Of a stretch of DNA of 64,000 nucleotides, positions 5,057 to 63,883 are shown piece after piece. Made by a program: the position numbers and the translations under genes. Position 1 is the stretch's first letter, and the number at the start of each line of letters is the position of its first letter. The stretch spans positions 62,001 to 126,000 of the IMG/VR virus record IMGVR_UViG_3300029893_000001, one strand, 5' to 3'. The notes beneath the pieces are model-generated. The model was not told the DNA's origin, did no database searches, and saw nothing but the letters and a program-made list of their open reading frames with translations.

Positions 5057-5434
5057 TTAGCCCTCCCAATAGACGGTGGACAACGTTCCCTGCTCTGGAA
5101 GATCCCCAAGTGCCAAGAGAATGTCGTTACCATCGATATCAATTCCAAGCTCCACGGGGACGTTTAGTTCGGAACTGGATAGTTCATCCATCCGAGAGGC
5201 GTCCCGTTGGTTGAAGATCTCAACAACGCAGTGGAGAATTCTTTTGAGAACCGGCGTCTCAGGATGAAATCTATTCAGTTCCGAAAACGGAATCCTCAGA
5301 TCTTGGTCCCCCATCAACCTGATGAGGGTCCCGATAGCTTGAAGCTCCGAGCCTGCACTCTCATCAATCTCTCGGTTGAGCTTCAGCCTGAAGCCGGTTC
5401 TTGTAAGTCTCTTGCCCATATCACCACAGAACAA
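5057..5434 (-). CDS. hypothetical protein
   Basis: 125 aa ORF within gene run. Confidence 0.55.
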   Translation of the reverse strand: MFCGDMGKRLTRTGFRLKLNREIDESAGSELQAIGTLIRLMGDQDLRIPFSELNRFHPETPVLKRILHCVVEIFNQRDASRMDELSSSELNVPVELGIDIDGNDILLALGDLPEQGTLSTVYWEG

Positions 5435-5719
5435 CTAATACGTTGGAGACAAGATGATCGCTTTGCGTCCATCCTCGATGAGGTCTTCCTCGTCGTATCC
5501 CTCTTCCTCCAACTCTGGAGTTAGTTCAGAATACCCGACCTCGCCGTACCAAGTCGTTTCGGCTCGATAGACCCCAGACCAAAATCCAGCAAGTGGTGTG
5601 TAGTCGTTCCCCTCGCCGTCCTTTGCCATAACGACGATGGCATCGGGGTCACATGTTTTCAGTTGCTCAATGAGCTGAGCAACCGTCATGGTATGCTCAT
5701 ACAGATCTTTGTCTGTCAC
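5435..5719 (-). CDS. hypothetical acidic protein
   Basis: MTV..LIEQL...DPDA.VV N-terminus typical of small phage proteins. Confidence 0.6.
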   Translation of the reverse strand: MTDKDLYEHTMTVAQLIEQLKTCDPDAIVVMAKDGEGNDYTPLAGFWSGVYRAETTWYGEVGYSELTPELEEEGYDEEDLIEDGRKAIILSPTY

Positions 5720-6678
5720 TTACCAGCTCCCAAGTATGCTTCCACCACATCTCGGACTCGCATCCAGTCCAAGCCACTGCCGAATTCACGATCCGAACCA
5801 CCAATGATGTCGGACCCATTCCAACTGACCTCCCGCTCGACAAGACGACGAGTGTCGTCCTCTATGAAAGCAGGAGGCTCTGCCTTGGACAACTCACGAT
5901 AGAGTTCTGGCACAGGAAAATCGATGTACCTAGAACGCCTTCCTATCGTGTATACGTAGCGACCGTCTGGACGCTGAGCTACGACACTAATGTAGCCGTC
6001 GAGTAGCCCCTGAGAAAACAGGGTGTACCGAGCCTCGTTACCCCCAATCTCGTTTACGATCTTGAACCGAGGCGAAGCATGCAGGATCTCGTATCGAGAA
6101 TCGAGGGACTTCTCTCCTGCCTGCCCAAGCAGAGCCGCATTCAGGTTCTCCATAACTGCCTGAATGCAGTTTCGAATAACCGTCTCGTCGGCGCGGGCAA
6201 GTGCACCTGACTTTCGAAGGTCAGTATACGGGCTGAAGATCCAACAATGCTGGCGGACGAGTGAGTCGTCAAGACTCATTGGATACGCCCCACCTGTAAT
6301 GTCCCAACGATCGTTTAGGGCCAACAGGCGACTAATAACAGGGTGGCTCTGTACTCCCGAAAACTGTTTGTGGTGCATCAGCAACCAAACAGCAAGGGCG
6401 GTATCTTGATCGGCGTCGTTGACATAAATGAAGCAACGATTGCCCATCCTATCCATGAGCCCGCCTTTGATAGCGAACATCACCTGCATAGCAGTGGACA
6501 TTGTCGCTTCACGAACGACGCCCTCATGATGATCAAAATTGACGTGAAGGGTCTTTTCGTCCCAAGCAGGCCCGCCGCGAACAACCCCGTCCAGCGCAAT
6601 AGAGCGTTGAGGAGTTAGGAGAACAAACTCCTCCCACGTAATCGACTGGCGAGGAAGAACTCTAATCTCGATACTCAT
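5716..6678 (-). CDS. DHH-like phosphoesterase
   Basis: IALDG, NFDHH and NDADQD motifs; start probably 6678. Confidence 0.55.
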   Translation of the reverse strand: MSIEIRVLPRQSITWEEFVLLTPQRSIALDGVVRGGPAWDEKTLHVNFDHHEGVVREATMSTAMQVMFAIKGGLMDRMGNRCFIYVNDADQDTALAVWLLMHHKQFSGVQSHPVISRLLALNDRWDITGGAYPMSLDDSLVRQHCWIFSPYTDLRKSGALARADETVIRNCIQAVMENLNAALLGQAGEKSLDSRYEILHASPRFKIVNEIGGNEARYTLFSQGLLDGYISVVAQRPDGRYVYTIGRRSRYIDFPVPELYRELSKAEPPAFIEDDTRRLVEREVSWNGSDIIGGSDREFGSGLDWMRVRDVVEAYLGAGK

Positions 6679-6700
6679 CGATATACCGCTTTCCTGAAGG

Positions 6701-7114
6701 TCAGGAGCCAGCGTTCTCGTGCTGCTCCAGCCAAGTAAGCAAAGCGTTGTTGGGGACGCCAACAGCTTGGATTTCCTGGCTGGATTCTCCTGTATCCTCG
6801 AAGTACCAGCCCTTCCCACCGTTGGCCACTGGCGTGTCGAACTTTACAGGACGTCCGGTCTTACGATCGACGACCCCCAGACGCTCCACGAGCTGAATCC
6901 CTGAGGGGCAGTCGACTCCTGTGTCCTCTACAGCTCTCACTGTTCCGTGAGGTGGACCCTTATCCCAATGATACTCAGTGAACAGGGTCTTGTATCCCCA
7001 CTCATACTGGATACCAATGAATCCGCTGGTGCCATTAAAGACAGCAACGTTGAAGTTCCGCGCTCGGACTCGGTAGAGGCGACCCTTCTTGCAGTCAACT
7101 AGAGATAAACTCAT
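6701..7114 (-). CDS. hypothetical protein
   Basis: ORF within gene run. Confidence 0.55.
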   Translation of the reverse strand: MSLSLVDCKKGRLYRVRARNFNVAVFNGTSGFIGIQYEWGYKTLFTEYHWDKGPPHGTVRAVEDTGVDCPSGIQLVERLGVVDRKTGRPVKFDTPVANGGKGWYFEDTGESSQEIQAVGVPNNALLTWLEQHENAGS

Positions 7115-7501
7115 GTTTGTTACTGTTGGCTGGAAATTCTGACAATCCAATCCTGTGAAAGAATGCAGTCACCCAACGTCCGCCATTTACACGAACGCAT
7201 TCTTCTTTGGCCTTCTTAACGGCCAATCGCCGAGTGCGACTAGCAACAAAAACAGGCTGACCGTCGCTGCGGTTGGAGGCATTCTCCAGCAAAACGAAGT
7301 AGTATTTCATCCGTTCTCTCTTGCCTCAAACCAGGCATGGAAGTGCTTTACCCACTCGGCTCTGTCCTGCTTGTCGGGCAGACGACCCGTGTCCTGTCCT
7401 TGACGGACCTGCTTTCGCCAGTCCATGACGTTCTGCAGTAGGTCCATGAATGCTTCGTCAGCAGTCATTTTAGGATTTTCAACCGGATTGCTCATAACTC
7501 C

Positions 7502-7780
7502 TCACGAGATTGGTTGGTCTTGATACCTACCAACGCAGTCGTTACAGATTCGCGCCCTAACGACACGCGGACCTTTCCACCAGCGGCCAATCTTCGAACA
7601 CTTTCGGCATGCAGGTTTCCCGCACGAATAACCAGGTTTCCCGCACGAATAACAGGTCGTTCTCGTGGAGCCCTCGCCTTCCGCCCATCCGCCTCCTGTA
7701 ATGCCGAATCCCGCAGGTGCTTCACAATCATTAGCCTGTAGGCTTACTTCACAAGCTCTACGCGCTCTTCTTTGCGTCAT
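7502..7780 (-). CDS. zinc-finger protein with internal 7-aa duplication
   Basis: CYSCGKP/GYSCGKP/ACRKC...ICNDC. Confidence 0.5.
   Translation of the reverse strand: MTQRRARRACEVSLQANDCEAPAGFGITGGGWAEGEGSTRTTCYSCGKPGYSCGKPACRKCSKIGRWWKGPRVVRARICNDCVGRYQDQPIS
7612..7653. repeat. perfect 21-bp tandem duplication
   Basis: caggtttcccgcacgaataac x2. Confidence 0.95.
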
Positions 7781-33508: not shown

Positions 33509-35149
33509 TCAGTCGAGCTGCATGCTCTCGATCTTCTCCACCCAGAACCGCGAGTCTGAACCCTGGCTGAAGGCGGAGATGACCTCAAACACTTGGTCGG
33601 AGAAGCCTCCGATGTTTAGCACCGAATTTCTCTCGTTTGGCACCTGAGTGGTCCCATTCGGTTGAACATCGATGCATACCAGCTTGCAGTCGGGGTTCTT
33701 AGCCTTGATCTGCTGCCAGATCGTCTCGCTCGCAGTGGCCGAGGCGCCGTACCAGTACGAGTACCTCTGCCGGTCCATCCACGACTCATTGTCAGAGACA
33801 ATGATGATCAGAGAAGGCTTGCTCCTCTGCCCAAGGATATGCTGGAAGCACGAGCTTACGTTCGTGCCGCCGCCTCCAATCGAGGCGAGTTTGTTTGCGT
33901 TGGTCATCACCGAATCCCTCGGGTTGAGGGACAATCTGGTGATAACCTGCTGCTCGAACGGAAGAACCTTTGCATTCGGAGAAGTGCGTAGAACAGATGC
34001 CGCAACTAGCGCAGCGACATCGATTACGCGGACAGAAGTCGTAGCGCCCTTACGGTGTCCCGTAACGGGCGAAGACATCGATCCGGACACGTCGGGGCAA
34101 ACCCAGACTTCGCCGTCGAACGCCGGAACGTTCTTGGTGGCGATCTCCATGGCATCCTGAAGAGCTAGCTTCAGCTCCATCGGGATGTCACTGTTTTTCT
34201 CCGTAGACTTGAACGCCATCAGGAGCTGATACGGGAATACCCGTGCCTTCCTGATTTCGTTCTCATCTCGAAGCTTGTCTGCAAGCTTCTTGACGACCGA
34301 AGCATCCTTTAACACACCGTGGCGTGCGAAGGTGTTCAGGTTCATCCGCACAAAGTGCCAACGACCGTTGAGAGCGATCTCTGTCCACTGCTTGGTGCCC
34401 AAGCTTAGCGCAGTGAGCATTTCGAACGGAACCTTCGGAACCTCGGCCGTCTTGGGAGACGACTTGAATTCCTCGAAGGACCGAATCAAGCGCGGTAGAT
34501 TGTCGGAGTTAGTCGCACCTTCCTTACCGAGTAGGTAATTGAAGGTAGCGTGCTTCTCTGCGTCAGAGCCGCTCTTGGGGCGTGCCAGGTGGATCACGTC
34601 CACAAGAGACGGGGAATTGCCGACGCTGTCACGGAAGATCTGCTCTGCAGTCCTTCGGTTGAACCAGTCCGCGATGACGGCCTTACCTGCGGTCCCAAAA
34701 GACTTACGACCAGTGACTCCAGATCTCACGATCTGTACGAAGTTGCGAAGCATCTTCGCATTGTCGATCGCGATGGGGAAGACCGTCTTGAAGAGACGAC
34801 GGTTCTCGGGATTCCCGTCCGCTGCACGAGCAAACAGGATAGCCGTCAAGAGAGCCGGCATGTCCTTCATAAAGGCGTTCTTTCGTGAGTAGATTGCCAA
34901 CTTCGCGAGGAAGCCGCTATCTACCTTCGACGCCATATCGAGGGTCTTCTTGAGCTGGTCCTCCGCCGACGCGTAGAACGTGCCGCTCAGCGTACCTGTG
35001 CAGGCATACTGCGCAAGTGCGCCGCGATGTCCGAGATCGTAAGCCAGGCCTCCTGCCTCGTTGCGGGTGGGTGCACCACTCGCATCGGTGGTAACAGGAC
35101 GCGGCTTCTTTCCACGCGGAGCAGAACCAAACAATTGCTTATTCGCCAT
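33509..35149 (-). CDS. rsr: Ro60 / TROVE-domain RNA-binding protein (Rsr orthologue)
   Basis: NEAGGLAY...GTFYAS, MLRNF, RMNLNT, FPYQL, vWA DVSGSM, GGTN, SDNE. Confidence 0.93.
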   Translation of the reverse strand: MANKQLFGSAPRGKKPRPVTTDASGAPTRNEAGGLAYDLGHRGALAQYACTGTLSGTFYASAEDQLKKTLDMASKVDSGFLAKLAIYSRKNAFMKDMPALLTAILFARAADGNPENRRLFKTVFPIAIDNAKMLRNFVQIVRSGVTGRKSFGTAGKAVIADWFNRRTAEQIFRDSVGNSPSLVDVIHLARPKSGSDAEKHATFNYLLGKEGATNSDNLPRLIRSFEEFKSSPKTAEVPKVPFEMLTALSLGTKQWTEIALNGRWHFVRMNLNTFARHGVLKDASVVKKLADKLRDENEIRKARVFPYQLLMAFKSTEKNSDIPMELKLALQDAMEIATKNVPAFDGEVWVCPDVSGSMSSPVTGHRKGATTSVRVIDVAALVAASVLRTSPNAKVLPFEQQVITRLSLNPRDSVMTNANKLASIGGGGTNVSSCFQHILGQRSKPSLIIIVSDNESWMDRQRYSYWYGASATASETIWQQIKAKNPDCKLVCIDVQPNGTTQVPNERNSVLNIGGFSDQVFEVISAFSQGSDSRFWVEKIESMQLD

Positions 35150-35219
35150 GGGACACCTCCAAATTGGAGTAGGGTTTAAAGACACAGAGCGTTAGCAACG
35201 ACCAACGCTCAAGAATAGT

Positions 35220-35349
35220 GCAGCGACAGGAAGTAAAGAGACTTGTTTTGTTTAGCTACTAGCCTTTTGGGCCGGTGGGACTTGAACCCACATTGAGAGA
35301 ATTTTGGTCTCTTGCTTTATCCGATGTAGTCCCTTTGAGCATTCGCTGC
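35220..35349 (-). ncRNA. Y RNA-like 1 (permuted tRNA-like module)
   Basis: GCAGCGAATG...GACTACA...T-arm GTGGG-TTCAAGT-CCCAC...CCTGTCGCTGC. Confidence 0.8.
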
Positions 35350-35353
35350 GATG

Positions 35354-35429
35354 AGCATCGCTGGGATTCGAACCCGGCTGGATTAGCCTACCAAGTAGAG
35401 GTGCATCCATCTACCCCCACTAACGATGC
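35354..35429 (-). ncRNA. atypical tRNA-like RNA with expanded anticodon region
   Basis: GCATCG/CGATGC acceptor, GGGTTCGAATCCC T-loop, TGGAT...ATCCA enclosing 21 nt. Confidence 0.55.
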
Positions 35430-35496
35430 AAATTGGAGCCTCCTTGGGATTTGCTGGTCAAGGTCGGCAGGAACACCAGATTCCGGAAGAATTAGT

Positions 35497-35570
35497 GCAG
35501 TGATAGGGAGTGTAGAGATGACGTGTTTTTCACCAAAAGAAAATGTAATCCCTACGAGCATTCACCCCGC
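35497..35570 (-). ncRNA. Y RNA-like 2 (short, no tRNA module)
   Basis: GGTGAATGCTCGTAGGGATTACA...ATCTCTACACTCCCTATCAC. Confidence 0.65.
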
Positions 35571-35576
35571 GATAGT

Positions 35577-35716
35577 TGGGCGACAGGAGATGAAGAGACA
35601 TCCATGGTTTTATGCTGCCGTTACACCACGTCCCCGCATGTGGGGACGCTAGGATTCGAACCTAGACCTCTTGCTTATCAGGCAAAAAAGATGTAGTCCC
35701 TTCGAGCATTCGCCCA
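35577..35716 (-). ncRNA. Y RNA-like 3 (permuted tRNA retaining a GAU anticodon hairpin)
   Basis: GGGCGAATG...TTGC-CTGATAA-GCAA, T-arm, looped acceptor CGTCCCC/GGGGACG, D-arm...CCTGTCGCCC. Confidence 0.82.
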
Positions 35717-43638: not shown

Positions 43639-43653
43639 TACCAAGCCCTCGCA

Positions 43654-43725
43654 CGCCTGCGGTGGGGATCGAACCCACGACATAGGGATTTAGAATCCCA
43701 CGTTCTACCACTGAACTACGCAGGC
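43654..43725 (-). tRNA. amber suppressor tRNA (anticodon CTA)
   Basis: Canonical cloverleaf; GGGA-TTCTAAA-TCCC. Confidence 0.88.
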
Positions 43726-43748
43726 AAACGGCACCAAGTTCTGGTGCC

Positions 43749-47440: not shown

Positions 47441-47481
47441 GTCGACGATGCTTGAACTCCAAACTAACGCTTTAAGTTGGA

Positions 47482-47612
47482 GCGCTGACAGGAGGTGTGA
47501 GGACCAGCTTCTTTTGCTCTACCAACTGAGCTACCCCTCCACACAACGGAGGGGGTTGGACTCGAACCAACGACACAAAGATTTACAATGTAGTCCTCAC
47601 TGCATTCAGCGC
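47482..47612 (-). ncRNA. Y RNA-like 5
   Basis: GCGCTGAATG...GACTACA, T-arm, looped acceptor CCCCTCC/GGAGGGG, D-arm AGCTCAGTTGGTAGAGC...CCTGTCAGCGC. Confidence 0.85.
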
Positions 47613-58335: not shown

Positions 58336-58343
58336 AAAAAGAA

Positions 58344-58475
58344 GCACTGACAGGAATTGGAGTGACATTTGGAGCCAATTGCTCTACCCCTGAGCTACCA
58401 GTCATCCAGGATGACTGGGCGGGACTCGAACCCGCGACCTACTGGTTAGATGTAGTCATCTCCGGCATTCAGTGC
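58344..58475 (-). ncRNA. Y RNA-like 9
   Basis: GCACTGAATG...GACTACA, T-arm, CCAGTCAT/ATGACTGG, D-arm...CCTGTCAGTGC. Confidence 0.85.
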
Positions 58476-60658: not shown

Positions 60659-62923
60659 TCACTCAGCAGCTTCTGCTGCTTCCAAACTCACGACAAGCTT
60701 CTTTGCTTCCTGATAGGTTGCAACAGCCGTCGAAATCTCGTGCTGAATTGCAATGTTACAGAGATGGTACTCCACAGAACGATTAAGGTCTTCGGGGGTT
60801 ACCTGAACACCGTAAGACTGAAGTCTGTTGTGGAGATAGGTACGCCTCTTTGCGTCGAATTTCTCGATGCTAAAGACCAAACGGTCTCCGTTTTCATCCC
60901 GGTTCAGCTCCTCAACTAGCTTCTTCGCTTCGTCCGGCTGCTTTCGAACGAAAGTGGTCATTTTCTCACGCCACACGTGATCGACCACCTTTCGAATGAC
61001 ATCACCCGTAGCGCCTTCGAGCCTCCTGGCTGGAAGATCGAAATCGGAGTCCGAATTCACCACAACCGGAAGAAACGAGGAGAAGTGCTTCAGTAGCTTA
61101 ACACGGTCTGCTTGGGTCAACTCTCCGACAATCAACACCTTGTTGAACCGCCGAATCATCGGCATCGGAATTCGACCAGGATGGTTCGTGGCACCCCAAA
61201 CAGACAGTTGGGGATAGCGAACAATACCGTCCATCAAGATCTGGAATTCAGTCGTAAGGTTCACGCCACCGAATGATCGGTAGCCTTCATCCTTCTTGAG
61301 GACCGCATCAATCTCGTCGATGAGAATGTGCACGTGCTTCTTAGACGACTTCTGAATCTTGAGGGCACCCTCGAACAGACGCTTCGGATTCTTCTCCGCC
61401 TCGCCCAACCAACACGTCAAGAAATCAGACCCTTGCGCGAACACGCCCACAGACTTCTTATCGCCACCAACCGCTCGAAGAATTTCACTCTTTCCACATC
61501 CCTGAGGACCGATGAGCAGGACATTGCTCTTGTCAGCCGACCTAGACGGTGAAGTCGCCATGAACAAGTCATGGAAGGCGGCAGAAGACTCAATCTGGTT
61601 GATGAAATCCTTCACTTCGTTGAACCCGGAACCTACGATTTCCTCCAGGTTGACCACCGGGCGTTCGCCTGGAACGATCTGAAGACCTCCAGGAGCATCA
61701 CCCAAAAAGCTGTTCCCGCTGCCAATATGACAGGTGAAGAAAGTGTTTTCGCCTTCGTAGTAGTTCCGCAGTTCTGACTTACGGCTCAAAACGTACTGAA
61801 CTACTTCCTTAGCCGTTGCGCCTGCCGTAAGTAGACCTGCTACAGTAGCGATGGTCTCATTTTTGAATGCGATGGCGAACCGCTCCTCTGCAGTAAGAAT
61901 CCCTTCCTTCTCTTTGTACGAGACACGATTTGGATCCAAATCCGAAATGAAATCAAGTGCTCGCTCGAAATCGAACAAAGTCGGAGAATTCTTAGGAGTT
62001 ACCTTCCGCAGAACCGCGTAGACAGGACCACGAAGCGGATCTACAAAAGCCCGGATTTGCTTCGAAAGCTCCCAAAGCGCCTGAAACCGGGATTTCACGA
62101 ATTCGATGAGAGCCTGTGGCTTCTGAATGAAGCCCTGAATAATGCCCTCTTGCATAGTCCTAATCATCAATTCGGCCTTCCGAATTGAGTACGCACTCAC
62201 CTCGTCTGGCGCCTTCCCGTCTGCGATTTCCCCATGCGCGTCTACGTTCTGATAGATCGAAAGGGCGAGGTCCGTTACAATCGGCGTCACGTGAATCTCA
62301 TACCCATCCACCGAATGACGCTTCACGAGTGTGTTGTAGTAGCTATCCAGAGCGTCAGTAACCAGGTACGCCAGATTCGTCAGATTCTGAGGAAGTGCCT
62401 CCAACTCCAAAACAGCGCCCACGAACCGACTCACTGCTTCAGCGTTGAACTGAATCTCCACCATTGCACGCTGGAGATTATCGGGATCGAACAAGTCCCG
62501 ATTACGGTCCTTCTTGGGACACAAGAGAAGCTCGCCGGGAGTCAGCCGTTCCACAGCCTCACGAATACGATGAATGCCGTCCTGCATGCCGCCCATGATT
62601 GAAATCACAAGGCGAATGAAGTTGTTACCAGTCACCGCCGACAATTCCGAAAACGGATCGCTATCGAACTCCTGTGTCGATGCGAATGGATTCCGCCTGC
62701 GCTGCGAGTTATGCAACTCTTCAGTAAGAGCCCTCCCCAACTGCTTGAGGGTGTGTACGTCATCGTCGAAATCATCGACGGTCTTATTGAGAACGATGCT
62801 AATGTCCTCAAGCTGAGGGCCGAGTTCACCGTTCGTCAACAAGCCTTGCATCAGGTCTGCAAGAGCGTAAAAATCGGTGGGACGAATGTGGACCGTGCTC
62901 GGATCTTTCAAGTTCTGAAGCAT
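60659..62923 (-). CDS. AAA+ ATPase with long N-terminal region
   Basis: GPQGCGKS, IDEIDA, GATN, RRF. Confidence 0.9.
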   Translation of the reverse strand: MLQNLKDPSTVHIRPTDFYALADLMQGLLTNGELGPQLEDISIVLNKTVDDFDDDVHTLKQLGRALTEELHNSQRRRNPFASTQEFDSDPFSELSAVTGNNFIRLVISIMGGMQDGIHRIREAVERLTPGELLLCPKKDRNRDLFDPDNLQRAMVEIQFNAEAVSRFVGAVLELEALPQNLTNLAYLVTDALDSYYNTLVKRHSVDGYEIHVTPIVTDLALSIYQNVDAHGEIADGKAPDEVSAYSIRKAELMIRTMQEGIIQGFIQKPQALIEFVKSRFQALWELSKQIRAFVDPLRGPVYAVLRKVTPKNSPTLFDFERALDFISDLDPNRVSYKEKEGILTAEERFAIAFKNETIATVAGLLTAGATAKEVVQYVLSRKSELRNYYEGENTFFTCHIGSGNSFLGDAPGGLQIVPGERPVVNLEEIVGSGFNEVKDFINQIESSAAFHDLFMATSPSRSADKSNVLLIGPQGCGKSEILRAVGGDKKSVGVFAQGSDFLTCWLGEAEKNPKRLFEGALKIQKSSKKHVHILIDEIDAVLKKDEGYRSFGGVNLTTEFQILMDGIVRYPQLSVWGATNHPGRIPMPMIRRFNKVLIVGELTQADRVKLLKHFSSFLPVVVNSDSDFDLPARRLEGATGDVIRKVVDHVWREKMTTFVRKQPDEAKKLVEELNRDENGDRLVFSIEKFDAKRRTYLHNRLQSYGVQVTPEDLNRSVEYHLCNIAIQHEISTAVATYQEAKKLVVSLEAAEAAE

Positions 62924-62967
62924 TGAACCTAGCCTTCTTCTGAGTCTGAATTTTGAAGGACTGAAAA

Positions 62968-63042: not shown

Positions 63043-63047
63043 AGAAC

Positions 63048-63272
63048 CGAGGAGTAGAAGCCCGCTGCCTAGGATGAGCGTCGCTCCTCGTGTAGTTGGA
63101 TTAGTCGGTTAGCCCCACACACGCTACCGACCACAGCTCCCCTACCATGGAGCTTTACCATCCTCACCAGCTCAAACAAAAGGCCGCATGCTGGATTGCG
63201 AATCCAGCCCTTCTATTTGAGTGCCAGCTATGGAACGTCTCTACATTCTACCGGCCGGATAGTGTAGAGTTC
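63048..63272 (-). ncRNA. multi-hairpin non-coding region
   Basis: Five consecutive stem-loops, no ORF. Confidence 0.45.
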
Positions 63273-63280
63273 AAAACGAA

Positions 63281-63466
63281 GCGGTGACAGGTTTTCGACC
63301 GAGTCTTATGTGGCCTCTCTTACTGTGCCTAAAACATCGTAGGTTAACAGCAGTGAGCATGGGTGTTTTGTTACCTACGCACCCTGGCTAGTCCACCTTT
63401 CCGAAGAAAGGGAGGAACATCGCTGTCTTAGGGCCGTTAGTGTAGACCGCAGTCTGCATTCACCGC
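63281..63466 (-). ncRNA. Y RNA-like 10 (non-tRNA pseudoknotted module)
   Basis: GCGGTGAATG...GTCTACA...CCTGTCACCGC; loop-loop CGTAGGT/ACCTACG. Confidence 0.7.
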
Positions 63467-63477
63467 GAGATATGATC

Positions 63478-63628
63478 TCAGTCTTATAGGTAACTGCTGC
63501 TTTATGCGGGGAGCTTTCACGATTTGCCCTTGGCTTTCACGGTTGCCCGTAAACACGAGTCCAGCGCGCTAGACATGGTGCCGCTCCCTCACAAGGGCCG
63601 CCTAAAACATAGTTACCTATAAGACTGA
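63478..63628 (-). ncRNA. structured RNA closed by an 18-bp perfect inverted repeat
   Basis: TCAGTCTTATAGGTAACT / AGTTACCTATAAGACTGA. Confidence 0.55.
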
Positions 63629-63637
63629 AACCAGATC

Positions 63638-63883
63638 TCAACCTTTCCTAACATGTATTTCAGCGTCGGCGTCACCATCTATTACGTGATAGTGGGTAAC
63701 AGCGGTCACACAGAACTTCTTAGGTTCATCCCGCTGGGGATGTGTTGCAGCCCCAGAGTTGGGGAGAACGACAAACTCACCCACACAAGGTACACGACTG
63801 AAACAGATAGGAACTGAATCCCACTTGCGTAAGCTTAGTTCGTCCTCAACAACAACCAAAATCTTAGCACCGATTTTACTCAT
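63638..63883 (-). CDS. hypothetical protein
   Basis: 81 aa; RVPCVGE motif. Confidence 0.55.
   Translation of the reverse strand: MSKIGAKILVVVEDELSLRKWDSVPICFSRVPCVGEFVVLPNSGAATHPQRDEPKKFCVTAVTHYHVIDGDADAEIHVRKG

What the first reader, a model, noticed from the sequence alone, without database searches (positions are those of the whole stretch)
63281..63466. Y RNA family member carrying a kissing-loop module instead of a tRNA mimic
Seen: the same terminal helix, but a ~130-nt interior with CCTTTC-TTCG-GAAAGG and a GGGTG/CACCC hairpin. That hairpin's loop CGTAGGT is complementary to ACCTACG in the next loop. There is no T-loop. Inference: the Ro-binding stem is a swappable handle, and this module recruits a different effector, by analogy with PNPase tethering by Deinococcus Yrn1.
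Basis: partly seen in the sequence, partly recalled or inferred. Interest (0 to 1): 0.7.

Follow-up and report, generated by a model that had tools for sequence, protein, structure and literature searches.

The report
Y RNA carrying a 23S rRNA look-alike
This phage gene encodes a small Y RNA (a handle for the Ro60/Rsr protein) whose variable part is not a tRNA mimic; it looks like a rearranged copy of a four-helix junction of the large ribosomal RNA. The same design sits next to the rsr gene in many Planctomycetota bacteria and does not seem to have been described.

Summary
On the minus strand, 63281-63466 has the YrlA-type terminal stem found in at least 8 sibling Y RNAs of this 392-kb phage, which also encodes Rsr/Ro60 (33509-35185). 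There is no T-loop and no Rfam match. The two hairpins and the 7-nt loop-loop complementarity are real.

The interior is not an orphan "kissing-loop module". It is the most divergent member of a family I traced: about 10 phage or metagenome copies and 39 chromosomal copies, 38 of them in Planctomycetota. Of those 39, 22 have rsr in the fetched locus, always on the same strand, and 21 lie 0.3-2.6 kb upstream of it.

Every member's best match to 23S rRNA is nt about 1911-1945. The covariation-supported helices and junction lengths reproduce the 23S H67-H68-H69-H71 four-way junction in circularly permuted order. The Y stem is grafted where the H69 loop would be.

The loop-loop pairing is better than shuffled loops in the candidate (0.45%) but is not conserved (1 of 27 relatives).

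Most likely it is an Rsr-bound Y RNA that displays a ribosomal-interface look-alike. Its partner is unknown. Neither Rfam 15 nor the searched literature describes it.

The parts
63281..63466 (-). The whole RNA (186 nt): a Y RNA with an rRNA-like module
   Evidence: Stem scan. Model R1 hit at 63283-63464(-), 20.2 bits, the only hit in the genome. nhmmer profile built without the candidate: E 4.4e-5, top hit in the genome.
63460..63466 (-). Outer terminal helix, 5' strand (GCGGUGA). It includes the GGUGAAUG variant of the Rsr-contact motif GNCGAAN0-1G.
   Evidence: The motif is defined in PMC4201824. The same U-for-C variant occurs in the window's best Rfam YrlA hit, 47479-47612.
63281..63287 (-). 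Outer terminal helix, 3' strand (UCACCGC)
   Evidence: 7 of 7 pairs with 63460-63466.
63444..63455 (-). Inner Y helix, 5' strand (AGACUG-C-GGUCU, with a bulged C), followed by the conserved CUACA
63297..63307 (-). Inner Y helix, 3' strand (AAGACUCGGUC). The 3' internal-loop strand GAAAACCUG lies at 63288-63296.
63413..63439 (-). 23S-like block UAACGGCCCUAAGACAGCGAUGUUCCU. 22 of 27 bases are identical to E. coli 23S nt 1917-1943 (H69 3' strand, C-UAA-G, GUAGCG, and the run-up to H71).
   Evidence: Local alignment. All other members hit the same 23S site.
63432..63435 (-). Module-closing helix, 5' strand (GGCC), the analogue of the H69 3' strand. It pairs with 63312-63315.
   Evidence: MFE and model alignment. 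The equivalent helix covaries in the family (helix 3).
63312..63315 (-). Module-closing helix, 3' strand (GGCC), the analogue of the H69 5' strand
63393..63415 (-). H71-like hairpin (CCUCCCUUUC-UUCG-GAAAGGUGG).
   Evidence: It occupies the same place as the family's CCGG-GCGA-CCGG hairpin.
63361..63384 (-). H67-like hairpin P3 (GGGUG, 14-nt loop, CACCC).
   Evidence: Its family equivalent is helix 6.
63316..63355 (-). H68-like arm: the conserved CACUG and GUAAG flanks with a hairpin between them
   Evidence: Model alignment. Flanks are shared with L095, L106, L116, L117, L139, L153 and L160.
63373..63379 (-). CGUAGGU in the P3 loop, complementary to 63338-63344
   Evidence: Duplex -11.0 kcal/mol; 0.45% of shuffles match it. 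Not conserved in the family.
63338..63344 (-). ACCUACG in the loop of the H68-like hairpin
33509..35185 (-). Rsr/Ro60 gene of the phage, the presumed protein partner, 28 kb away
   Evidence: Pfam vWA_Ro60 3.7e-14 and TROVE 2.8e-6. 51-54% identical to bacterial TROVE proteins.

Best explanation
63281-63466(-) encodes a Y RNA. Its 5' and 3' ends form the Rsr/Ro60-binding stem used by the phage's other Y RNAs. Its effector module is a circularly permuted look-alike of the 23S rRNA domain IV four-way junction (H67, H68, H69 stem, H71). The Y stem is attached where the H69 loop would be.

Shown:
- The stem is the YrlA type.
- The RNA belongs to a family of about 50 RNAs.
- The family is linked to rsr in bacteria.
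- The family's helices covary.
- The family shares sequence, cyclic helix order and junction lengths with the 23S junction.

Inferred:
- Rsr binds the stem.
- The module offers an rRNA-like surface to something that normally recognises this part of the large subunit. In the ribosome that part forms the central bridges to the 30S subunit and touches the tRNAs (established knowledge, not tested here).
- The particle therefore either brings Rsr and its exonuclease partner to that something, or soaks it up.

My preferred partner is the 30S subunit interface or a protein specific for this rRNA junction. The phage carries the RNA inside its tRNA/Y-RNA array, probably to manage the translation apparatus during infection. 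The candidate is the most divergent member: two substitutions in the core junction, and a plain loop in place of the family's GAGUCUC cap. In this copy, the loop-loop pairing may substitute as a local brace.
For: Stem and siblings.

Rsr gene.

Membership:
- R1, built only from 16 Planctomycetota copies, aligns the candidate end to end (20.2 bits, E 5.9e-5 in 2 kb). It hits nothing else in the window or in the 392-kb genome at E<=1.
- nhmmer gives E 4.4e-5, against 0.064 or worse for the sibling Y RNAs.
- The nearest relative, L095 (phage G002), scores 46 bits. It shares CCUAAG..AGCGAUGU, CUAG, CACUGC and GUAAG with the candidate.

23S likeness:
- All ten members tested have their best local alignment at 23S 1911-1945. 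L106 is 25/26 identical, score 47 against a null of 21 +/- 2.
- Five other RNAs, used as negative controls, show nothing.
- ACGGUC pairs with GGCCGU exactly as in H69. The 3' block ACGG(A)CGGCCGU matches 23S 1900-1911.
- Cyclic order and junction lengths (1 nt between H67 and H68, 0 nt between H68 and H69, C-UAA-G-GUAGC-G after H69) match the Rfam LSU consensus.

Structure: 95.4% of cells are paired against 25-47% when slid; 20 of 45 pairs have double changes; 0 of 500 shuffles reach this. The candidate's MFE equals the family fold.

rsr linkage: 22 of 39 chromosomal copies have rsr in the fetched locus, all on the same strand, 21 upstream by 0.27-2.6 kb.
Against: - The candidate's own scores are modest: 20 bits, and 23S alignment score 29 against a null maximum of 29.
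- It deviates at two positions of the core junction that read GU in every relative (GACAG for GGUAG).
- Family members were collected with an exact pattern containing CCTAAGNNAGCGATG, so invariance of those bases is partly by construction.
- Outside the first block, sequence similarity to 23S is weak. A permuted global alignment gives only z about 5 and is barely better than native order.
- The correspondence of H67 and H68 rests on topology and short motifs. No 3D model was made.
- There is no expression data: only DNA runs hold the sequence.
- Rsr binding could not be evaluated.
- In this phage rsr is 28 kb away.
Confidence: 0.7

Rival explanations
1. One reading: the module is defined by a loop-loop (kissing) interaction between the GGGUG/CACCC hairpin and the next hairpin. 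That fold recruits a new effector, by analogy with PNPase tethering by Yrn1.
For: There are seven perfect complementary bases, or 11 with one bulge. The duplex is -11.0 kcal/mol and only 0.45% of shuffled loops do as well. The closest relative, L095, could form ACAAG/CUUGU between the equivalent loops (read from the sequence).
Against: The pairing is not conserved: 1 of 27 relatives beats shuffles, median p 0.62. Most relatives have a conserved capped stem where the candidate has the loop. The 5 bp in L095 are within chance. The pair was chosen after looking. This reading does not explain the conserved core.
Confidence: 0.15
2. The module works as a free decoy or substrate rather than a tether. 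It would soak up, or be modified or cut by, an enzyme or toxin that targets this part of 23S rRNA: a pseudouridine synthase or methyltransferase of the H69-H71 region, or an rRNA-cleaving defence nuclease. This would parallel the phage's tRNAs and tRNA-like Y RNAs.
For: tRNA-like Y RNAs are substrates of tRNA enzymes (PMC4201824). The RNA sits in a 28-tRNA array. Nine members keep the H69 loop sequence AACUAUNA.
Against: The H69 loop sequence is missing in most members. The 1937-1944 stretch is shortened to AUG. Strict linkage to rsr on the same strand argues that Rsr is part of the mechanism. No such enzyme gene is conserved beside it.
Confidence: 0.25
3. The resemblance to 23S rRNA is coincidental or convergent. 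The module is an independent fold whose junction happens to share a 12-26 nt string with rRNA.
For: Only one block is statistically strong. The rest is short motifs.
Against: All of the following coincide with the rRNA junction:
- an identical 12-nt junction string;
- the H69 stem sequence on both strands;
- the flanking hairpin with G...C closure;
- the same cyclic order of four helices;
- the same 1-nt and 0-nt junctions.
Some members extend identity through the whole H69 loop, including the G variant found in a Planctomycetota 23S.
Confidence: 0.15
4. It is a decaying or neutral copy: a Y RNA whose module has drifted and no longer works.
For: It has the lowest score in the family. It has two changes in junction bases that are otherwise invariant. 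It has lost the conserved cap.
Against: All helices of the family fold are intact and equal the MFE. The terminal stem is perfect. The sequence is identical in six runs from three studies, though these may be the source samples.
Confidence: 0.1

Closest known systems
YrlA (Rfam RF02553), the tRNA-like bacterial and phage Y RNA
   Same: Same terminal architecture and motifs: outer helix, AUGC / CCUG internal loop, inner helix, CUAC. Same genomic company: the rsr operon and tRNA arrays. Eight such RNAs are siblings in this genome.
   Different: It has no T-arm, D-arm or acceptor-like hairpins, and no Rfam hit. Its module imitates rRNA rather than tRNA.
YrlB / Yrn2-type Y RNAs (long hairpin, small loop)
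   Same: They are non-tRNA Y RNAs bound by Rsr that coexist with a tRNA-like one (PMC4201824). Minimal 58-71-nt versions occur in this phage and its relatives.
   Different: Those have no elaborate module. This RNA has a 130-nt four-way junction.
23S rRNA domain IV junction H67-H68-H69-H71 (E. coli nt about 1830-1975)
   Same: Shared junction string C-UAA-G-GUAGC-G, H69 stem sequence, a hairpin in the place of H71 followed by C, the order of helices, and the junction lengths.
   Different: - It is circularly permuted, opened at the H69 loop.
- H68 is cut down to a short arm.
- H67 is capped.
- The 1937-1944 strand is shortened.
- The H71 loop is replaced by GNRA or UUCG.
- It is about 130 nt and sits on a Y stem.
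rRNA mimics in ribosomal-protein mRNA leaders
   Same: They are small RNAs that imitate a piece of rRNA to capture a ribosome-binding factor (PMC7247131, listed).
   Different: Those are cis-acting leaders of r-protein operons. This is a stand-alone RNA on an Rsr handle with no r-protein gene beside it.
D. radiodurans Yrn1 in the Rsr-Y RNA-PNPase machine; phage phiLo Yrl1/2
   Same: A Y RNA used as a tether between Rsr and a second component. Phage-encoded Rsr and Y RNAs are known (PMC4201824, PMC12135203).
   Different: The partner-binding module here is unrelated in sequence. Its partner is unknown.

Membership tests
Bacterial/phage Y RNA (Rsr-associated) | Long stem formed by the 5' and 3' ends, with an internal loop or bulge | tested here: met
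   7-bp outer helix, internal loop, and a 10-bp inner helix with a bulged C.
Bacterial/phage Y RNA (Rsr-associated) | GNCGAAN0-1G motif near the 5' end (PMC4201824) | tested here: inconclusive
   The candidate has GGUGAAUG, with U for C and a compensating A in the 3' strand. The same variant is present in the window's two best Rfam YrlA hits.
Bacterial/phage Y RNA (Rsr-associated) | Encoded with an Rsr/Ro60 gene | tested here: met
   rsr is in the same phage genome, 28 kb away on the same strand. In relatives, 21 of 39 copies lie 0.27-2.6 kb upstream of rsr.
Bacterial/phage Y RNA (Rsr-associated) | Bound and stabilised by Rsr | not testable with these tools
   The complex prediction was not folded and gives no evidence. 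No RNA runs hold the sequence.
YrlA subfamily (RF02553) | tRNA-like module (T-arm GUUCRA, acceptor-like and D-arm hairpins) | tested here: not met
   No T-loop. No YrlA hit at E<=10, while siblings score 27-62 bits.
rRNA-like Y RNA family defined here (model R1) | Full-length match to the covariance model | tested here: met
   20.2 bits, model positions 1-171, E 5.9e-5 (2 kb) and 0.012 (392 kb). It is the only hit in the genome. This is the weakest member.
rRNA-like Y RNA family defined here (model R1) | Core junction CCUAAGGUAGCGAUG followed by a hairpin and CUAG | tested here: met
   Present as CCUAAGACAGCGAUG + hairpin + CUAG. Two of the bases differ from all relatives.
rRNA-like Y RNA family defined here (model R1) | Four-way junction: closing helix, H71-like, H67-like and H68-like arms in that order | tested here: met
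   The model alignment and the MFE agree. The family helices covary.
rRNA-like Y RNA family defined here (model R1) | Conserved GAGUCUC...GAGAC cap on the H67-like arm | tested here: not met
   It is replaced by a 14-nt loop in the candidate and by a 15-nt loop in L095.
23S rRNA (true rRNA fragment) | Match to the LSU rRNA model; part of an rRNA operon | tested here: not met
   No LSU hit at E<=10 in the candidate or in five relatives. It is flanked by tRNAs and Y RNAs and lies on a Y stem.

The most novel reading that the evidence does not exclude
Rsr-Y RNA particles come in matched sets that imitate the ribosome's own ligands: tRNA-like Y RNAs and this 50S-interface-like Y RNA. The rRNA-like module would dock on the free 30S subunit the way H67-H71 of the 50S does. 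With the Y stem emerging where the H69 loop would be, the Rsr ring would sit near the decoding site. From there it could block subunit joining or feed 16S rRNA to an exonuclease. Phages would have borrowed the system to shut down or remodel host translation.
Probability: 0.12. Interest if true: 0.92.

Novelty: new variant of a known kind. Interest (0 to 1): 0.78.

Why it matters
Bacterial Y RNAs are thought of as an Rsr handle plus a tRNA mimic, and what the mimic is for remains open. A second, widespread module class that copies the subunit-interface junction of 23S rRNA would have three consequences.
- It would show that the handle carries a repertoire of look-alikes of translation RNAs.
- It would point the function of Rsr particles at the ribosome itself. 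Rsr is already tied to rRNA maturation and decay in Deinococcus.
- It would give a concrete hypothesis to test: binding to 30S subunits or to factors specific for H69-H71.

It would also be a rare natural case of a circularly permuted rRNA domain used as a stand-alone RNA. Its presence in huge phages next to tRNA arrays bears on how such phages take over translation.

Tried and rejected
- **Rfam:** gathering and E<=10 scans gave nothing at the candidate or at relatives.
- **BLAST against phage records:** only the flanking tRNAs matched.
- **Synteny through the neighbouring AAA ATPase:** L002 has no RNAs there. L005 has tRNA-Asn next to tRNA-Asp with no homologue between them. P0123 gave no DNA.
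- **Sequencing runs:** only DNA runs hold the sequence, all identical to the window, so there is no variation and no expression data.
- **Strict Y-stem pattern in 20 Rsr phages:** too narrow.
- **First collection pattern with three blocks:** found only G002.
- **RNAalifold on the MAFFT alignment:** it mispaired the Y stem, so I set the structure by hand and tested it with slid and shuffled controls.
- **Second model including phage members:** I replaced it with an nhmmer profile.
- **R1 over 121 Planctomycetota genomes:** found only the seed genome. The first-look filter scored 23 of thousands of candidates, so this says nothing about prevalence.
- **Complex prediction of Rsr with the RNA:** not folded, so no evidence.
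- **Kissing loop as a family feature:** rejected.
- **Nested alternative using the 7-bp pairing instead of GGGUG/CACCC:** 2.6 kcal/mol worse than the family fold.
- **rRNA similarity of the two neighbouring RNAs and of other module classes:** none.
- **MazF-type UUCCU site:** considered from memory. It is present in the candidate but not conserved, so I dropped it.

Full report
**Setting.** The window is bases 62001-126000 of a 392-kb IMG/VR phage record. The sequence is found in subsurface and rock metagenomes. From about 27.6 kb to the end of the window there are 28 tRNA genes, all on the minus strand. A 558-aa Rsr/Ro60 protein is encoded at 33509-35185(-), with Pfam vWA_Ro60 at 3.7e-14 and TROVE at 2.8e-6. 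It is 51-54% identical to bacterial TROVE proteins. Rfam's YrlA model gives sub-threshold but clear matches at 47479-47612 (61.7 bits) and 58341-58475 (54.8 bits), plus weaker ones. A scan for the stem signature found eight sibling Y RNAs with T-loops, and the candidate without one. That signature is five bases, GAAUGC, an interior, CUGUC, then the complement of the first bases.

**The observation.** Read on the minus strand, 63281-63466 begins GCGGUGA-AUGC-AGACUGCGGUCUACAC and ends AAGACUCGGUC-GAAAACCUG-UCACCGC. This is the same architecture as the Rfam YrlA consensus ends and as the siblings. The interior has the UUCG-capped hairpin, the GGGUG/CACCC hairpin with a 14-nt loop, and a third hairpin whose loop holds ACCUACG, the complement of CGUAGGU in the 14-nt loop. 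There is no T-loop and no Rfam match at E<=10.

**Relatives.**
- A relaxed stem scan over Rsr-encoding viral contigs (loci) showed that the same stem carries tRNA-like modules, bare 58-71-nt hairpins and other interiors.
- One of these, L095:5923-6077(-), lies in the phage with the closest Rsr in IMG/VR (74% identity). It shares CCUAAG..AGCGAUGU, CUAG, CACUGC and GUAAG with the candidate.
- Patterns built from these blocks found more copies in viral contigs (L106, L107, L108, L165) and in metagenomes (L110, L111, L114, L116, L117).
- In species-representative genomes the pattern matched 47 stretches of DNA. Of these, 39 are matched by the family model at E<=0.01 and carry a Y-type stem (CCAAC-UGCC ... 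CUUC-GUUGG). 38 of the 39 are in Planctomycetota; the other (L140) is a Labilithrix MAG. They sit among tRNA arrays and YrlA-like RNAs.
- No Rfam family covers any of them.

**Link to rsr.** In 22 of the 39 chromosomal copies, rsr lies in the same 8-kb locus. It is always on the same strand, and in 21 cases the RNA is 0.27-2.6 kb upstream. Most of the others have too little downstream sequence to tell. For L141 and L156, rsr lies just beyond the locus. In L127 the order is module RNA (5221-5396), YrlA-like RNA (5555-5658), rsr (5899-7716). By genomic association, this is a class of Y RNA.

**Resemblance to 23S rRNA.** The shared core reads ACGGUCC-UAAGGUAGCG, which I recognised as the H69-H71 region of 23S rRNA. 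I tested this against E. coli rrlH.
- All ten members tested have their best local alignment at nt 1911-1945. L106 is 25/26 identical (score 47 against a shuffle null of 21 +/- 2). The candidate is 22/27 identical (score 29, equal to the best of 200 shuffles).
- The same holds against the 23S of Stieleria marina, one of the carriers. Its H69 loop has the same G as several modules.
- Two neighbouring RNAs and three other Y modules show no rRNA similarity by the same method.

**Structure.** I aligned 16 Planctomycetota copies (A3) and tested a hand-set structure.
- 95.4% of cells are paired, against 25-47% when the partners are slid. 20 of 45 pairs have changes on both sides. None of 500 shuffles reaches this. 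G-U pairs fix the strand.
- The module is closed by ACGGUC/GGCCGU, the sequence of the H69 stem.
- Inside, the order is: C-UAA-G-GUAGC-G; a short strand; a hairpin closed by G...C; C-UAGUGAA; a helix GGCGCC/GGGGCC with a capped extension; one unpaired base; a GUC/GAC helix carrying a variable hairpin. The closing strand follows with no spacer.
- The Rfam LSU consensus for this region reads: H69 3' strand; C-UAA-G; GUAGC; G...[H71]...C; UGCACGAAU; H67 3' strand. On the other side it reads: H67 5' strand; one base; H68 (GCC...GGC); no spacer; H69 5' strand.
- The four helices therefore come in the same cyclic order with the same junction lengths, but the chain is opened at the H69 loop, where the Y stem is attached.
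- Nine members keep the H69 loop sequence AACUAUNA on the 5' side. Some phage members keep both strands of the base of H68 (CUGCCGG ... CCCGGUAAGGGCGG).

**Caveats on the resemblance.** The bases in the search pattern are invariant by construction. Beyond the first block the sequence similarity is weak. The H67 and H68 assignments rest on topology.

**Does the candidate belong?**
- Model R1, built only from the 16 bacterial copies, finds the phage members at 24-64 bits. It finds the candidate at 20.2 bits over the full model.
- The candidate's E-value is 5.9e-5 in a 2-kb search and 0.012 in the whole genome, where it is the only hit. None of the eight sibling Y RNAs is hit.
- An nhmmer profile made without the candidate gives E 4.4e-5 for it and 0.064 or worse for the siblings.
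- The model alignment assigns the UUCG hairpin to the H71 place, GGGUG/CACCC to the H67 place, and CACUG...GUAAG to the H68 arm. It assigns GGCC/GGCC to the closing helix. This fold is identical to the unconstrained MFE, -57.4 kcal/mol.
- The candidate is the outlier of the family. It has GACAG for GGUAG in the junction and no GAGUCUC cap.

**The kissing loop.**
- In the candidate, the two loops pair better than 99.5% of shuffled loops.
- A nested alternative that uses the 7-bp pairing in place of GGGUG/CACCC is 2.6 kcal/mol worse than the family fold.
- Across 27 relatives with measurable loops, only one passes p<0.05 and the median is 0.62.
- The pairing is therefore at most a private feature of this copy, and perhaps of L095. 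It may replace the lost cap. It does not define the module, and no compensatory change supports it.

**Mechanism.**
- Shown: a Y-type stem; an rsr-linked family; a covarying four-way junction that copies the 23S H67-H71 junction.
- Inferred from established knowledge of Y RNAs: Rsr binds the stem and the module brings a partner (Rsr tethering to PNPase; tRNA-like modules handled by tRNA enzymes; PMC4201824, PMC12135203).
- In the ribosome this junction forms the central intersubunit bridges and touches the tRNAs. This is textbook knowledge and was not tested here.
- My preferred reading is a tether or competitor aimed at the 30S interface, or at a protein specific for this junction. A decoy for an rRNA-modifying or rRNA-cutting enzyme is the main alternative.
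- Nothing here measures expression or binding.

**Novelty.** Full-text searches for Y RNA or Rsr together with rRNA mimicry, helix 69 or Planctomycetes found no description of such a module. One key review could not be read. Rfam 15 has no family for it. I rate it a new variant of a known kind: a new Y RNA module class.

Noticed in passing
window 63467-63645 (-): Directly upstream of the candidate lies a very stable unknown RNA-like element. It has a stem of about 23 bp (including CAGUCUUAUAGGUAAC / GUUACCUAUAAGACUG) enclosing about 110 nt with three hairpins. MFE is -81 kcal/mol, z -7.7 against shuffles. It has no Rfam match and no rRNA similarity.
   Followed up: partly
window 63044-63280 (-): The 237-nt gap between the candidate and tRNA-Asp has no ORF of note. 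It contains hairpins, including a terminator-like one at 63184-63201. It has no Rfam match and no rRNA similarity.
   Followed up: partly
window 43653-43726 (-): There is a tRNA with anticodon CUA (ARAGORN calls it tRNA-Pyl; Rfam tRNA 69.8 bits). It is a possible amber suppressor, which would fit stop-codon recoding in a huge phage.
   Followed up: no
window 35220-35716 (-), just upstream of rsr: A cluster of Y RNAs: 35220-35349 and 35577-35716 are tRNA-like, and a minimal one of about 72 nt lies at about 35497-35568. ARAGORN's 'tRNA-Ile' at 35640-35713 is actually the tRNA-like module inside the Y RNA 35577-35716.
   Followed up: partly
L045:2187-2339 and L079:2281-2442 (Rsr-encoding viral contigs): A further non-tRNA Y RNA module class of about 155-160 nt shares ACAUCAAAG.AAG..AGACGRUAGUAA after the stem. 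It has no rRNA similarity. L052 and L053 carry still other interiors of 88-103 nt.
   Followed up: partly
L156 (Stieleria marina chromosome 3664001-3672000), L141, L122, L140: The bacterial rsr loci that hold the family also hold very dense tRNA arrays (about 30 tRNA hits in 8 kb in L156) and several YrlA-like RNAs. This resembles the phage array.
   Followed up: no
window 60659-62929 (-) and its homologues P0169, P0177, P0182 and others: The neighbouring 756-aa AAA ATPase is widely conserved in huge-phage contigs at 45-52% identity. Several homologues are about 1100 aa and carry intein/homing-endonuclease Pfam domains (PF05203, PF05204, PF14528).
   Followed up: no
genome G000:C1:126728-126876 and about 126405-126426 (just beyond the window end): Two more Y RNA stems continue the array past the window.
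   Followed up: no
L113:5502-5540 (-): A metagenome contig matches the 5' pattern (Y stem start plus CCUAAGGCAGCGAUG), but I found no closing 3' strand. It may be a truncated copy or a chance match.
   Followed up: no
L106, L116, L117 (phage-type members): These three share a conserved UUUCUCUCCUUUCUAC in the H68-like arm. It faces GAGAG-rich sequence in the H67-like arm, so a different long-range contact is possible. It is not better than shuffles (p about 0.3).
   Followed up: partly
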